DNA of 64,000 nucleotides from Fimbriosthenelais zetlandica (lineage: Eukaryota): contig OZ365114.1 of assembly GCA_977030845.1 (NCBI GenBank), forward strand, positions 21,514,001 through 21,578,000, written 5' to 3'. The position numbers and the translations under genes are program-made. The notes under the pieces were generated by a model that saw only the letters and a list, made by a program, of their open reading frames with translations, ran no database searches and was not told the DNA's origin. Shown here one piece after another: positions 2,011-7,979 of this stretch (within the stretch, counting starts at the first letter, position 1; the number at the start of each line of letters is the position of its first letter).

Positions 2011-3078
2011 AAAAAAAGATATTTCAAATCGTGGATCAGTTCAATTCCTGATAGCTTTTTTAATTCTGTTAGCATTTATATTTCAGATTGTCCTCACCAA
2101 TTCTGCTGACCAGGAAAGCGTTTGAACCAGTAGCACGGTGGACATATCAATGCTAAATGATCTATTGACAAAACGGGTGCAAATCGAATTAGGCCTAAAA
2201 TGAGAGTGGAGTGGCGGTATGAGTTGTGTAATCCCCGAGGAGTTGGCTACTGGATGGATGTGGGGGTTATGTTTACACTGTAATAGTGGGAGAAATCATT
2301 AGCAGGCCCGTCAGGCCACATCGGACACATGAGAGCATGTGTGGCCACTTAGCACATGATTGCCACTCCCACACATTAAAATCAGGGGGCTGTTGCAGCA
2401 AAATCGCTTTTTCAGAGAAGTATTGCCACTGCAAGTTACCCGATCGGGGAATGCGAGCTACAAGGCAATCAAATATACCCTGAAAACTGATCTAAAAGTA
2501 ATGCATATAATGTGCAAGAGTGGTAAGACTGCAGAAATATACTTCGTCAGTCTTGCGTCACAGCATATTTTGCTGTGAGGGAATAGGAGTGTCAAAAATG
2601 AACCAGTAATAAAATGAATTGATTCTTCCTCAAAACAGAGGAACGACACCTTTAACTATTCCTACAGACTTTTCCTTCCAGAGAAGCATTAACTTGGATG
2701 GTAACCTTCATACTTTCCAATATTTCAGAGTGATGGTTGAAATATAACTTGCATTACAATAGCTTAGCTATGATCATGGTCCGAAATGTGAAAGGAAAAG
2801 GTAATTTTGCCTAGTATAAAAGTAAAGTATATGGAATATATTTACCATCTCTAATGAAGTTCTACTATCCATGAATCCAGTGACAGTTATAATATAACTG
2901 TATATCATTCCCAGATCTGAGATGTTTCCATTGATAAATCCTGTGGATTTCATGCAGATTCAGATGGCTCCTTCGATATGTTCCATGAGGTATGATATTA
3001 ATAAATAATACATGGATAATGTCCATCCATAGAGCCAATATTTCAGTTTATCCATTTCTGCTGAAAGTGAAAACGTGA

Positions 3079-3330
3079 TTAGAGAGGGGATAGTGACGGA
3101 GGGTGGGGGTTTCTATTAGAAGATGGGAAGGAACATGCATGGTGGAGAATTAAAATGGTCTTGTTCTCTACGTGATTGAAGCGATTAAATCGGACATGTT
3201 TCGTGTATAAACTGCCAACATGGGGCGAGGGGAGGAAATTCACATAAAGGTCGTTGTCATGACAAGGAGGCCGAGCAAAGAACACACGCACTGCGGCGTT
3301 CTGATTGAGATTGTCTCTACCAGACGACAA
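3079..3330 (-). mobile_element. Possible decayed LINE endonuclease remnant
   Basis: ORF-track peptide VRVFFARPP...NKTILILHH has the spacing of the EN motifs VYRPP...ILxGDFN, but key residues are lost. Confidence 0.25.
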
Positions 3331-3959
3331 TTTCTCGTGTCAAATTCGCGGCGCGGCTAACACCTGCCGCGCTATGGGGGCAGCAGGCGGGACCGCGCGA
3401 GGAGAGGGGCGGCAAGTAGGGGAAGAGCGTACCCGGGGGCAGGAGACAGGGGGAAGATGAGGAAGAAAGGGGGAAAATATAGTAGGAATGAGAGAAAGTG
3501 AAGATAGATAGATTGCCGCGTTTAAATAAGTTGAACGTGAAGCCTTCTAATCTCTCTTGAAAGAAATACAGTTGTTAATGAATTAAAAGTATCTATGGAC
3601 GTTAAATAAATTTTCTACAAAAACCAAGGAAAATCATTTAAAAAGACGCGTGAAATCAACTATGTCAGGATGCACATAAAAACATTCAAGGTGCGAGAAA
3701 AATATTTCGGCAATTACTTGTTCATTTTTCTACCAAGGTGTGTAAAGAAAGTTGTCCAGAGTGGCATGCACTCTCTACATGTGTAGGGGAGGGTAGGGGC
3801 CAAGAGGCTAAGCTATGCACCCAACTCAGGCGGACCATTTGCGTGTAAGCCGTCACCTTCTAACCAGAAATTACACCCATTCACGACAGGGGCTTAAAAA
3901 TACCCACCAAAACAACCTACTTATAGAGAAAATATATTAACAAAACAGCAAGCTCTTTC

Positions 3960-6906
3960 CTTTTCAATTGTTTTCCATTTTATTACATTTGTTCTCAGTT
4001 TCCATACTTAATTGAATTGAAATGCGTCGAATAATTAAAGTATATCCATTCTCCATTTCTCTCTTCTGGTATTTTAGTAATAATCTGGGTGCACATTATA
4101 TACAAATGTTTGTTGACATTAAAAGCCAAAAAATATGCAAACAAAAGAACTCTCGCATAGCCAGAGTTCCATTCTCACTAGCTCAAAAATGTGTGGCATA
4201 GCCATACAGAAGAGAAAACACTCATCTCTCACAATATTAGAACATGATAGTATATGAACCGATTACAGACATTCTTTTTTTCCACAGGCAACAATCGCAC
4301 ATTTCACTATACTCCCTCTGACTATCGTGTAATAATAATTAACTAAAATATGAATCAGTCAGTTTTGCTTCGCTTTCCCCCCATTCTCTCAAAAAGAATT
4401 CCTATAAATAAATTTGTCACAATATAGATTCTACAACCACTGCTGTCCTCTCTGACGCAGTCCGAGGAAGGGGAGAAATGCAAAATATTGCAATAGAAAA
4501 AAATGAGGCCATGACTGCCATGTCTATACATATATAATAATAATGTTGAGAACAATTTCACTATAATAGTTTTCGTTTCACCATTGGTTGCTTTATGAAG
4601 AAGAGAACCCTTTCAAACTACATGTACTTCGTCTATCTCCCCCAGGGTATGGGAGTGACGGCGTATTTAAATAATGTAATATACAGGAGACATGAAGAAA
4701 AGTGATAGCTATATAATAACATGACTTCAAAAATAGGAGATTCAACCGTTTACCTTCATTCACCTGTCTTCGAACCGAATCGACTTAGTCACAAGCCAAG
4801 TTGACTATGGTAGGATTTGGCATTAGTTGAAAAAAAACAAGGAACCTTCAATTGTTTAAATGACCTATGTATTAATAGGAAAAAATAGTATTGGACTTGT
4901 CAACGCAATGGACATAACCATTGCACAAGTCCCAGCGTTACACATATATTCATTCAAGAAGAAATTCATTTAAACCTTTCTTACTTAATAACTAGGCAGA
5001 AATAATGTCCATTTCTAATGCTTTTAGCCCTTAGACCTGTAAGTTGTAATTCCCAATTTTTGACTGTCCGTGGCTTTTGCAGCAAGGAACCGTCAGATAG
5101 TTTATAATACAAAATATCATAATAGATTTCTTCTCCGTTAAAGATTTGACTGCTTTTATGGTATTTGACCCGTGGAGGCAGCACGTCGTGGTAATAAAGT
5201 ATCTATACAGTTCATACTCCTCATTTCCATTCTATCCCTGCATGCAAACTCTCACAGCAATGTCCAAAGAAGGTTTCCATTTAAATATAGGCTTGAAAAA
5301 AGACCCTGATCGGCCACTGTAGTAATGATTACAATAATTACTATAATCATTATTTTCCTAAAGTCTGTCGTAAGCATTTTCCTGGGGGTCAAATTGACAT
5401 AACATAATAAGCAGCACCCACACGAAGAATTTCAATATATCTTATGAACCACACTCAGTCTCTTTTACATTTACAAAGATAATCATTATTATCGTCAATA
5501 TTAGATATAGCTGATATTTTTTTTCAATTAAATATCATCTTTCTCCACTCCTCCCCACTTGTTTTTCACAGACATACAAATAAAATCATACTCACTCGAA
5601 CACACTAAAAGTTGCCACCACTGTGCGCTGCCCTTCACTTATAAACCGACCATCTGAGTCACAGATGATGTTAAATGAATATTTGGTTGGACACTTAGAC
5701 ACACACAGATAGAGCAATTTATACAAGCACTCCATATAATACACATTTCATAAAGAGATTCTTCGCTGCGATTCTTCCCTCCTCAGTCCATTTTATATAG
5801 GTAACAATTATTGCAACTGACGTCTTTTCTGCTTCCCTTCAGATGGTTTATCAACCACCGAGGATGGAGATCGTGAGACCAACTTTGTGGAGTCCTCTCC
5901 TTGTGCACCCGCGGGAAAGTTTCTCTTTGATGACCAATCCTTGTTTCACTGGGCATGGGAGTGCTACTTCCAACAGTCATAGATGTTGAGATTTGACTTG
6001 TTCCTTATCAATGTTATCAGTTGTTAGGCTCATGGCGAACCAGGAGAAGGTCCAGTGTCTTGAACATAGTGAAAAAGCCATTTAAGCATGGAGGAAATGG
6101 CCATAGACATACAGGTATACCGGTAGTATATGGCTGTCCATCTACACTTGTTAACTTTTCTACACATAGTGTCACAGTCAGAGGGTATGGAGTTGGAAAC
6201 CAGTAGAAATGGTCTCAAAGAGATGAAATTTGAAGAATTCCTATCTTTCCTCAGATGGGCACTCACTCGGGAGCGTTCCCCACTCACGAATCACACAGCT
6301 TGGTTGTGGAGGGGGTAGGTACCCCTTCTTCCAACAGAGAGACCGTCCAGTGAATCTCGGCAGGCCGGCGCCTGGAGTCCCCGGGCCCGGTCCCACCTTT
6401 TCCGCCGCGCGGCCCCAAATTAAGCCGGGAGACTTTGACGTCGCGGCTACTTCTTCTTTCTCCTCTTTTACCCCAACTTTACAGCAACTTAGAACAGAAC
6501 CAGAAAGCAGCTTTTTGGGGAGCCGTTTTCTACATTACAGACTTGATGTTTTTTGTCCATGACAGTACATTACTTGCTCTGGCTTGATGTTGAAATTTCC
6601 CCCACAGATTTCACCAGGGTCGCGTTTGAGGGTGCAATTTTACACACATGCACGACCTAGGGGTCGGTAGACAAGGGGAAATTGTGGACGCCATAAGAAA
6701 CAAGCTACTTACAAGTCTGTGACACTGCAGGGGCGGCGATGGTGGTGATGTTGGGGACTGTTGCTGTGTAGTTGTGCGATGGTAATATAGTTGGTAAAGA
6801 GGGAGAGAGAGAGCTGTGGCAGTTTTCATCTACAACATTCTATATGATGAGAAATTATACATATACAAACTGTTGCTTAATAAAGGTGTCCCGTGTTCCT
6901 TTACCC
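3960..6906 (-). other. Predicted long (~2.9 kb) SoxB1 3'UTR
   Basis: Interval between the stop codon and the first AATAAA. The distal part is AU-rich with PUF, CPE and miR-92 elements. Inferred; there is no transcript evidence. Confidence 0.5.
3979..3984 (-). terminator. Putative SoxB1 polyadenylation signal (AATAAA)
   Basis: First canonical AATAAA I find on the minus strand downstream of the stop codon (TTTATT on plus). It is followed about 30 nt later by a U/GU-rich tract (gcttgctgttttgtt). Confidence 0.55.
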
Positions 6907-7899
6907 TCACATATGGGAGAGGGGAATTGTGTTGCTAGCATTATGATCCACACTGGATGAGGAATGGCTGGAATGGCTGGAGGAGCCATATTGTCCTTGC
7001 ATGGCAGCCATTCGGCTTTGCGCCTGGGCATTGGCAGGATCGCCAGGTAGATACATACTGATCATGTCACGGAGATCTCCTTGGCCGCACGCCTGGCCAC
7101 GACTGTCCGTTCTGGTATTACCTTGACTTTCCTGCTTGATGTTGCTCTGAAGATGTGATGGATGCTGCATGGAATAGGGCGCCATGGAGTAGGAATAACT
7201 TGACGTACCGTTCATGTAGCTTGCTGCTGTGGTGCTCATTTGATTCATAGAGACACCCATTTGGGCGGCTGTGGGCAGGTTATAGCCGTATTGTGAACTT
7301 AGGCCCATCTGACCACTCATGGCGTGTTGTTGGTAAGCGTGAGGATCGTGCATCATAGGGTAACCATTGGGCATGTAACCGTTCATATTCATAGGGTACA
7401 TGTCTCGGCCTACCTGCTGAACCTGGGCACCCGGCGGCATGCCTGGAAGGGCATACTTGTCCTTTTTCATCAAGGTCTTGGTCTTGCGCCGGGGACGATA
7501 CTTATAATCGGGGTGTTCCTTCATATGAATGGCTCGTAACCGCTTAGCTTCATCGATGAATGGTCGCTTTTCAGCTTCCGTCAATAGTTTCCACTCGGCG
7601 CCAAGCCTCTTGGAGATTTCCGAGTTGTGCATTTTAGGGTTTTCCTGGGCCATTTTCCTCCTCTGTCCTCGCGACCAGACCATGAAGGCGTTCATGGGGC
7701 GCTTGACTCGCTCCATGTTGGCTTTCTGGGCGGCCGTTTGGCCCGCTGAGGAGTTCTGCATATTGCCGGACTGGGAATTAGGCTGGCCCGGCTGGTGAGG
7801 GACTTGAGAATGCGTCATATGGCCGGTCGGCGATGTGTTGGTCTGCGGCGGCATGCTGGATTTAAGATCCGTGTCCATTCTATCCTCTGTCGAATACAT
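6907..7899 (-). CDS. SoxB1: SoxB1 (Sox1/2/3 group) HMG-box transcription factor, single exon, 330 aa from first ATG (323 aa from second ATG at 7878)
   Basis: Uninterrupted ORF. HMG box [76 protein letters not shown] (about 7486-7710) is followed by the group-B motif [11 protein letters not shown], the SoxB1-specific C-terminal motif [12 protein letters not shown] and the terminus TIPLSHM. The N-terminus MYSxxxxMDTDLK resembles vertebrate Sox1/2/3. The ORF-track start at 7959 is a TTG; the first ATG is at 7899. Confidence 0.97.
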
Positions 7900-7979
7900 G
7901 GAAGAACTCCCAGTGTTGTCCACCCGGCTTCGGCACGTAGGCTCTCTATGACAGTCCAAACACTACCGTCCACAGTCAA

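What the first reader, a model, noticed from the sequence alone, without database searches (positions are those of the whole stretch)
4486..5815. miR-92 target sites in the SoxB1 3'UTR, one with unusually extensive pairing
Plus-strand 4920-4936 reads ATTGCAC-AA-GTCCC-a-GC, nearly the sequence of canonical miR-92 (UAUUGCACUUGUCCCGGCC...). The minus-strand mRNA would therefore pair with miR nt 2-8, mismatch at 9-10, pair at 11-15, wobble at 16 and pair at 17-18. Two further 7mer-A1 sites (TATTGCA on plus) lie at 4486-4492 and 5809-5815. A rough estimate for the 12 fixed matches arising by chance in 2.9 kb is about 1e-4 per miRNA family, before multiple testing. A seed plus central mismatch plus long 3' pairing is the geometry of strong supplementary sites and of target-directed miRNA degradation triggers. 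The SoxB1 mRNA may be cleared by miR-92, or may itself regulate miR-92 levels.
Basis: partly seen in the sequence, partly recalled or inferred. Interest (0 to 1): 0.78.

Follow-up and report, generated by a model that had tools for sequence, protein, structure and literature searches.

The report
Unconserved miR-92 match after SoxB1
A 17-base stretch about 2 kb after the SoxB1 gene really would pair well with this animal's miR-92, but it is missing from the closest relative, locked in a hairpin and no rarer than chance allows, so it is most likely a fortuitous or at best ordinary microRNA site.

Summary
ATTGCACAAGTCCCAGC is at 4920-4936(+). This annelid-like genome encodes four miR-92 hairpins.

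No RNA run was listed, so the 3'UTR extent is only inferred. A conserved AATAAA with a GU-rich element at 3935-3984, and a sense-strand lack of poly(A) hexamers, fit a UTR of about 2.95 kb that includes the site.

The functional reading is weak:
- In the only close relative available (SoxB1 93% identical) the extended site is absent. It lies in the one ~190-nt patch of the distal UTR that does not align.
- The 4486 seed is disrupted in that relative. Only the 5809 7mer-A1 is kept, which is the background rate for 7-mers.
- The site forms one arm of a species-specific 15-bp hairpin and is the costliest 17-nt stretch of the UTR to open.
- Five more distant SoxB1 genes show no seed enrichment.
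- Chance is about 1e-4 to 7e-4 per miRNA family. Genome-wide there is one non-self hit against one for the reversed control.

Verdict: probably an unselected, lineage-specific match. At best it is an ordinary miRNA site. A TDMD trigger is geometrically possible but unlikely. The same reader noted other miR-92 and miR-10 target ideas elsewhere in this genome.

The parts
6907..7899 (-). SoxB1 coding sequence (330 aa from the likely ATG at 7897-7899; stop 6907-6909)
   Evidence: ORF list. The best hits all carry the HMG box and SOXp Pfam domains, and named hits are SoxB1/Sox2 of annelids, molluscs and brachiopods.
3960..6906 (-). Presumed SoxB1 3'UTR of about 2.95 kb (inferred, not shown by RNA)
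   Evidence: The sense strand has no AATAAA or ATTAAA before the terminal signal, against 4.5-4.9 in dinucleotide shuffles (P about 0.01) and 7 on the antisense strand. The relative shows the same bias: 1 sense, 8 antisense. No RNA run was listed.
3935..3984 (-). Conserved poly(A) signal AATAAA (3979-3984) followed by a conserved GU/U-rich downstream element (3935-3953)
   Evidence: Aligned and conserved between the window and L007.
4920..4936 (-). Extended miR-92-complementary site: 7mer-m8 seed match, 2x2 mismatch at nt 9-10, 8 contiguous pairs at nt 11-18 including one G:U
   Evidence: duplex -27.9 kcal/mol; 3' block -14.0 kcal/mol. Absent from the relative.
4893..4932 (-). Species-specific hairpin (7 + 8 bp, 4-nt bulge, 6-nt loop) that sequesters the seed match and most of the 3' block
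   Evidence: Folds on both strands. Opening the 17-nt site costs 15.6-17.5 kcal/mol, the highest of 108 sampled UTR positions. There is no equivalent hairpin in L007. Single copy in the genome.
4820..5012 (-). Non-alignable patch (36-40% identity in a forced alignment) inside an otherwise 57-91% conserved distal UTR; it contains the extended site
   Evidence: No inversion or relocation was found. Only 1% of its 7-mers are conserved.
5809..5815 (-). miR-92 7mer-A1 seed match, conserved in the relative inside a 14-nt identical block and predicted to be accessible
   Evidence: Opening energy is about 2 kcal/mol. Conservation is no better than background.
4486..4492 (-). miR-92 7mer-A1 seed match within the palindrome TATTGCAATA; disrupted in the relative although its flanks are conserved

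Best explanation
The 17-nt string is a lineage-specific stretch of the long SoxB1 3'UTR that happens to be complementary to miR-92, and it shows no sign of being kept by selection. It arose (or was lost in the sister lineage) within a fast-evolving ~190-nt patch, together with a short inverted repeat that folds the site into a 15-bp hairpin. If miR-92 and SoxB1 mRNA meet in the same cells, the three seed matches could give the modest repression typical of 7mer sites. The accessible, conserved 7mer-A1 at 5809-5815 is the most credible of the three. There is no evidence that the extended site is a dedicated clearance element or a regulator of miR-92 levels. Shown: the sequence, the pairing, the presence of miR-92 genes, the non-conservation, the hairpin and the chance rates. 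Inferred: the UTR extent and the absence of selection.
For: The site is absent from the only close relative (SoxB1 93% aa identity), while flanking UTR blocks align at 57-91%. It lies in the least conserved patch, where 1% of 7-mers are conserved against 26% across the distal UTR. One of three seeds is conserved, which equals the background expectation of 0.6-0.8. The seed and 3' block are sequestered: opening the 17-nt site costs 15.6-17.5 kcal/mol, the maximum of 108 sampled positions, and the seed alone costs 8.2-8.6, the 93rd percentile. The hairpin is also absent from the relative. In the first 3 kb after the stop of five more distant SoxB1 genes, seed counts are 0, 0, 0, 1 and 0. The chance rate is 1e-4 to 7e-4 per miRNA family for this UTR. 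Genome-wide, the full seed-NN-3' block pattern has one occurrence outside the miR-92 genes themselves, against one for the reversed control. The same reader raised several other miRNA-target ideas in this genome, so many hypotheses were tried.
Against: The only genome-wide occurrence of the pattern falls in the sense strand of the 3' flank of a key developmental regulator. Sense-strand 3'UTR is only a few percent of the genome by my rough estimate, which was not computed here. The UTR has three miR-92 seeds against 0.53 expected (P = 0.03). The net predicted energy (duplex -27.9 against about +16 to open) is still favourable by about 11 kcal/mol. Only one relative could be compared, so loss in that lineage cannot be told from gain in this one. 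Non-conserved sites can still work in the species that carries them.
Confidence: 0.6

Rival explanations
1. Genuine, species-specific (or genus-level) repression of SoxB1 by miR-92. The conserved accessible 7mer-A1 at 5809-5815 and the extended 7mer-m8 site with 3' supplementary pairing at 4920-4936 would together recruit miR-92-Argonaute, promoting deadenylation and decay of SoxB1 mRNA where the two are co-expressed.
For: Four miR-92 hairpins are present in the genome. Seeds are nominally enriched in the UTR (P = 0.03). Eight contiguous 3' pairs cover nt 13-16, the favoured supplementary register. The 5809 site is conserved inside a 14-nt identical block and costs about 2 kcal/mol to open. 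The UTR probably reaches the site.
Against: The extended site and the 4486 site are not conserved. Conservation of 5809 is at background. The extended site is the least accessible point of the UTR. Distant orthologues show no enrichment. No expression or co-expression data are available. The papers that mention both miR-92 and SoxB1 do not report such a pair.
Confidence: 0.28
2. The SoxB1 3'UTR is a target-directed miRNA degradation (TDMD) trigger. Seed pairing plus the 8-bp 3' block would pull the miR-92 3' end out of the Argonaute PAZ pocket and mark the complex for ZSWIM8-type ubiquitylation, lowering miR-92 in SoxB1-expressing cells.
For: The architecture falls within the empirical range a review lists for validated triggers: seed match, unpaired nt 9-10, at least 6 contiguous 3' pairs, and 3' hybridisation energy of -14.0 kcal/mol against a quoted range of -9.6 to -17.1. 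The fly lncRNA Marge triggers decay of the miR-310 family, which Rfam places in the same clan as mir-92 (CL00137).
Against: The site is not conserved in the nearest relative. It is a 7mer-m8 without A1, whereas most validated triggers are 8mers. The internal loop is minimal (2x2). The last four miRNA nucleotides are essentially unpaired. The site is locked in a hairpin. Nothing is known about abundance, and a transcription-factor mRNA is unlikely to be abundant enough to titrate four miR-92 genes (inference).
Confidence: 0.04
3. The hairpin at 4893-4932 is the functional unit, a structured element of the UTR bound by some protein, and its likeness to miR-92 is incidental. A variant of this idea is that the hairpin gates access to the miR-92 site until a helicase or RNA-binding protein opens it.
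For: The local fold is unusually stable (z = -3.9 on the + strand and -2.0 on the mRNA strand). The 60-nt tile holding it is in the top 2.3% for the window.
Against: The relative has no hairpin at the homologous place. 58 loci in 64 kb fold at least as well. The loop and stem match no Rfam family.
Confidence: 0.06
4. The + strand carries a diverged or decaying mir-92 paralogue. The miR-92-like string sits on the 3' arm of a hairpin, as the mature miRNA does in genuine mir-92 precursors.
For: 15 of 17 bases match miR-92 nt 2-18. The string is on the 3' arm of a hairpin whose 5' arm pairs with it.
Against: The stem has only 15 bp and the loop 6 nt, far short of a Drosha/Dicer substrate. No mir-92-type Rfam family matches at E up to 10 with lax filters, while the genuine hairpins on C10 match mir-92, mir-92_2 and mir-310 at E 3e-5 to 1e-3. 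The hairpin is absent from the relative.
Confidence: 0.02

Closest known systems
Canonical animal miRNA 3'UTR site with 3' supplementary pairing (7mer-m8 plus pairing centred on nt 13-16)
   Same: Perfect match to miR-92 nt 2-8, mismatch at nt 9-10, and contiguous pairing at nt 11-18. The site is in the probable 3'UTR and the cognate miRNA is encoded in the genome.
   Different: No A opposite nt 1. Not conserved in the nearest relative, buried in a hairpin, and about 2 kb from the stop codon in the middle of a long UTR.
TDMD trigger sites (Cyrano/miR-7, NREP/miR-29b, HSUR1/miR-27, Drosophila Marge/miR-310 family), as reviewed in PMC10899785
   Same: Seed match, central mismatch and at least 6 contiguous 3' pairs, with a 3' hybridisation energy (-14.0 kcal/mol) inside the quoted range.
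   Different: A 7mer rather than an 8mer, a minimal 2x2 loop, four unpaired 3'-terminal miRNA nucleotides, no conservation and low accessibility. ZSWIM8 dependence is untested.
mir-92 / mir-310 precursor hairpins (Rfam RF00464, RF03554, RF04249)
   Same: A miR-92-like string lies on the 3' arm of a hairpin on the + strand.
   Different: The stem is 15 bp and the loop 6 nt. No covariance-model match, whereas the four real hairpins on contig C10 do match.

Membership tests
Canonical miRNA target site | Watson-Crick match to miRNA nt 2-8 (or nt 2-7 plus A1) | tested here: met
   GTGCAAT in mRNA sense at 4920-4926 (7mer-m8). TGCAATA at 5809-5815 and 4486-4492 (7mer-A1).
Canonical miRNA target site | The cognate miRNA is encoded by the same genome | tested here: met
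   Four hairpins on C10 at 39.944-39.950 Mb carry [A/U]AUUGCACU[U/C]GUCCCGGCC on the 3' arm. They match Rfam mir-92 families below gathering score, at E 3e-5 to 1e-3.
Canonical miRNA target site | The site lies within the transcribed 3'UTR | tested here: inconclusive
   No sequencing run was listed. Indirect support comes from the conserved AATAAA and downstream element at 3935-3984 and from sense-strand depletion of poly(A) hexamers in two species.
Canonical miRNA target site | Preferential conservation of the seed match in related species | tested here: not met
   The 4920 and 4486 seeds are absent from L007/L008 and 5809 is kept. One of three equals the 19-26% background for 7-mers. Five more distant orthologues show no enrichment.
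Canonical miRNA target site | Local accessibility of the seed match | tested here: not met
   For the extended site the seed costs 8.2-8.6 kcal/mol to open (93rd percentile) and the 17-nt site 15.6-17.5 (maximum of 108 positions). The 5809 site is accessible at about 2 kcal/mol.
Canonical miRNA target site | Co-expression with the miRNA and measurable repression | not testable with these tools
   This needs small-RNA and mRNA expression data plus reporter or CLIP experiments.
TDMD trigger | Seed pairing plus at least 6 contiguous 3' pairs, with 3' hybridisation energy of about -9.6 to -17.1 kcal/mol | tested here: met
   nt 2-8 are paired. nt 11-18 are paired with one G:U, -14.0 kcal/mol. Criteria are taken from PMC10899785.
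TDMD trigger | An unpaired central region separates seed and 3' pairing (3-11 nt in validated triggers) | tested here: inconclusive
   The loop is a symmetric 2x2 mismatch at nt 9-10, at or below the short end of the quoted range.
TDMD trigger | Conservation of the site, as seen for the best-known validated triggers such as Cyrano (from my own knowledge) | tested here: not met
   Absent from the nearest relative.
TDMD trigger | ZSWIM8/Dora-dependent loss of the miRNA when the site is present | not tested
   No small-RNA data are available, and the ZSWIM8 orthologue was not searched for in G000.
mir-92 precursor | Match to mir-92-type covariance models | tested here: not met
   No mir-92-type hit at E up to 10 in 4800-5020. 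The positive control on the C10 hairpins succeeded.
mir-92 precursor | A stem of about 30 bp or more with a terminal loop of roughly 10 nt or more | tested here: not met
   The stem is 15 bp with a 4-nt bulge, the loop is 6 nt, and there is no basal extension.

The most novel reading that the evidence does not exclude
The SoxB1 3'UTR of this annelid-like species carries a young, species-specific high-affinity miR-92 site that is held closed by a hairpin. When the hairpin is opened by a helicase, an RNA-binding protein or ribosome-independent remodelling, the site would act either as a strong repressive site or as a TDMD trigger that lowers miR-92 in SoxB1-positive neural precursors.
Probability: 0.04. 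Interest if true: 0.6.

Novelty: not a real feature. Interest (0 to 1): 0.15.

Why it matters
If real, a miR-92/SoxB1 link, or a TDMD trigger inside a core neural-progenitor transcription-factor mRNA, would be a noteworthy regulatory circuit in a lophotrochozoan. The evidence here points the other way. If it does work, it is an ordinary new member of a very well-known class, a 7mer site with 3' supplementary pairing. The useful by-products are an inferred ~2.95-kb SoxB1 3'UTR with strongly conserved distal blocks, and the location of the species' miR-92 cluster.

Tried and rejected
1. RNA evidence for the UTR: the look-up of sequencing runs was tried on 3000-6900 (kind rna) and 5900-6900 (kind any).
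2. More relatives:
- The 78%-identical SoxB1 (P0002) sits on a contig whose DNA could not be served.
- Two exact-pattern scans of metagenome contigs with conserved UTR blocks gave nothing or one unrelated 24%-GC contig.
- The 3' flanks of more distant orthologues (L009-L013) do not align with the window at all. They were used only for seed counting.
3. mir-92 paralogue on the + strand: rejected.
4. Repeat or transposon origin of the hairpin: rejected, because 4850-4990 is single copy in the genome.
5. Inversion or relocation of the non-alignable patch relative to L007: no support.
6. Rfam at gathering thresholds over the whole window: no hits.
7. Literature: papers holding both miR-92 and SoxB1 were searched for. 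The one paper opened mentions the two separately, and none of the seven titles indicates such a pair.
It was replaced by a tiled MFE scan.
Full report
**Observation**

The + strand reads ATTGCACAAGTCCCAGC at 4920-4936, and this is the only such string in the window. TATTGCA occurs on the + strand at 4486-4492 and 5809-5815. The first of these is part of the palindrome TATTGCAATA.

The only sizeable ORF nearby is a 350-codon minus-strand ORF at 6907-7959. From its likely ATG (7897-7899) it encodes a 330-aa SoxB1 protein. The best database hits all carry the HMG box and SOXp domains. The named ones are SoxB1/Sox2 of annelids, molluscs, brachiopods and nemerteans. An earlier follow-up note of this scan calls the genome annelid-like.

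In mRNA sense the extended site starts 1981 nt after the stop codon. The two 7mer-A1 matches lie at 1092 and 2415 nt.

**Does the species have the miRNA?**

Yes. A pattern search of the window's own genome (447 Mb) finds four copies of the miR-92 core on contig C10 at 39.944-39.950 Mb. Each sits on the 3' arm of a hairpin of about 60-70 nt with a long stem (-29 to -41 kcal/mol). Each matches the Rfam mir-92, mir-92_2 or mir-310 models at E 3e-5 to 1e-3, below gathering score but specific.

The mature sequences would be AAUUGCACUUGUCCCGGCCUGC and three close variants. Laid against the site they pair as follows:
- nt 2-8 are paired.
- nt 9-10 are U:U mismatches.
- nt 11-15 are paired.
- nt 16 is a G:U wobble.
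- nt 17-18 are paired.
- nt 19-22 are essentially unpaired.
- G lies opposite nt 1.

The site is therefore a 7mer-m8 with an 8-pair 3' block. The duplex energy is -27.9 kcal/mol, and the 3' block alone gives -14.0.

**Is it in the 3'UTR?**

This could not be shown directly. No sequencing run was listed for either query, so no reads could be laid.
- The only AATAAA on the sense strand after the stop is at 3979-3984. It is followed by a GU/U-rich stretch at 3935-3953, and both are conserved and aligned in the relative.
- The 2.9 kb before it contain no AATAAA or ATTAAA on the sense strand. Dinucleotide shuffles give 4.5-4.9 (P about 0.01), and the antisense strand has 7.
- The relative shows the same asymmetry: 1 sense, 8 antisense, 4.2 expected.

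I read this as a single long 3'UTR of about 2.95 kb. It is an inference, not an observation.

**Chance**

Over the whole window both heptamers occur at shuffled frequency: 10 against 10.9, and 14 against 15.3. Within the presumed UTR there are three seeds against 0.53 expected, nominal P = 0.03.

A run of at least 8 contiguous pairs (at most one G:U) with miR-92 nt 9-22 occurs at 2.7e-4 of all positions in the window in fixed register. With offsets of up to 2 nt the rate is 1.3e-3.

Genome-wide, the pattern GCYGGGACNNGTGCAAT occurs five times. Four are the antisense strands of the miR-92 genes themselves and the fifth is this site. The reversed control pattern occurs once. So the genome holds about as many such strings as chance predicts.

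What remains is that the one string lies on the sense strand of a 3' flank.

**Conservation**

A Logan contig from a close relative was available (L007, with L008 from a second run; SoxB1 93% identical in protein). It covers 4.3 kb after the stop.
- The proximal ~1 kb of the UTR is poorly conserved.
- From 5830 to about 3750 the two species align at 57-91% per 100 nt, with perfect blocks of up to 71 nt.
- The exception is a patch at about 4820-5012, where a forced alignment gives 36-40% identity. The extended site lies in this patch.
- The relative has no GTGCAAT anywhere in its 3' flank. The patch is not inverted or moved.
- The 4486 seed is disrupted in the relative although its flanks are 79% identical.
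- The 5809 seed is kept inside a 14-nt identical block.

In the distal UTR, 26% of all 7-mers are perfectly conserved, and 19% over the whole UTR. One conserved seed out of three is therefore the background expectation.

Five more distant SoxB1 loci (L009-L013) have 0, 0, 0, 1 and 0 seven-mer seeds in the first 3 kb after the stop. About 0.5 each would be expected. SoxB1 is thus not a recognisably conserved miR-92 target.

**Structure**

The site is the 3' arm (on the + strand) of a hairpin at 4893-4932, with 7 + 8 bp, a 4-nt bulge and a 6-nt loop.
- The same hairpin forms in the mRNA strand.
- Opening the 17 nt costs 15.6-17.5 kcal/mol, the highest of 108 positions sampled along the UTR.
- The seed alone costs 8.2-8.6 kcal/mol, the 93rd percentile. 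The 5809 seed costs about 2.
- The net predicted gain of about 11 kcal/mol is borderline.
- The hairpin has no counterpart in the relative and is single copy in the genome.
- Hairpins this stable are not rare: 58 loci in 64 kb fold at least as well.

**Could it be a mir-92 paralogue?**

The miR-92-like string lies on the 3' arm of a + strand hairpin, so I tested whether this is a diverged mir-92 gene. It is not. The stem is far too short. No mir-92-type Rfam model matches at E up to 10 even with lax filters, whereas the real hairpins do match.

**TDMD**

A review of TDMD (PMC10899785) lists seed pairing, an unpaired centre, at least 6 contiguous 3' pairs and a 3' energy of -9.6 to -17.1 kcal/mol as the empirical features of validated triggers. 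This site meets them loosely.

Several things count against it. It is a 7mer rather than the usual 8mer. Its 2x2 loop is minimal. It leaves the last four miRNA nucleotides unpaired. It is not conserved, and it is occluded by the hairpin. I rate TDMD at a few percent.

**Conclusion**

The sequence observation is confirmed and the geometry is as described. Every test that could separate a selected regulatory site from a fortuitous match came out on the side of chance: conservation in the nearest relative, conservation relative to background, accessibility, recurrence in orthologues, and genome-wide frequency against a control.

The most likely reading (about 0.6) is an unselected, lineage-specific match. 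A working but ordinary repressive miR-92 input to SoxB1, carried mainly by the accessible conserved 7mer-A1 at 5809-5815, remains possible (about 0.3). Exotic readings are unlikely. Interest is low.

Noticed in passing
G000:C10:39944003-39950512 (loci L001-L004): The species' miR-92 cluster. Three hairpins lie within about 540 bp and a fourth about 6 kb away, all on the minus strand, with mature 3p sequences that differ at nt 1, nt 10 and the 3' tail.
   Followed up: partly
L004:1958-2627 and 2963-3018 (G000:C10, next to the fourth mir-92 hairpin): A tandem series of sub-threshold C/D-box snoRNA matches (SNORD61/snoU61/SNORD103-like). Three lie at a regular 140-nt spacing (starts 2277, 2417, 2557), suggesting a snoRNA array that shares a host locus with mir-92.
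   Followed up: no
window 3168-3367: A 200-nt block 91-92% identical to the relative and single copy in the genome. It lies about 600 nt beyond the inferred SoxB1 poly(A) site, separated from the UTR by unconserved sequence. It is likely a conserved non-coding element (enhancer or unannotated RNA).
   Followed up: partly
window 4088-4158 and 4658-4695: Blocks of 71 nt and 38 nt perfectly identical to the relative in the distal 3'UTR. The 71-nt block holds the UTR's only Pumilio-type UGUAUAUA motif (4097-4104, sense strand only, also present in the relative). These are better candidates for post-transcriptional control elements than the miR-92 match.
   Followed up: partly
window 5830-6810 versus 3750-5830: An unusual conservation profile. 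The first ~1 kb after the stop codon is almost unalignable with the relative (33-50%), while the distal ~2 kb is well conserved.
   Followed up: partly
G000:C27:16172662-16172679 (L005): A miR-92-like string with one mismatch to the search pattern (CATTGCACTGGTGCCGGCC) in a foldable region (-35.5 kcal/mol). It gave no Rfam match at gathering score, and its status as a miRNA gene is unclear.
   Followed up: no
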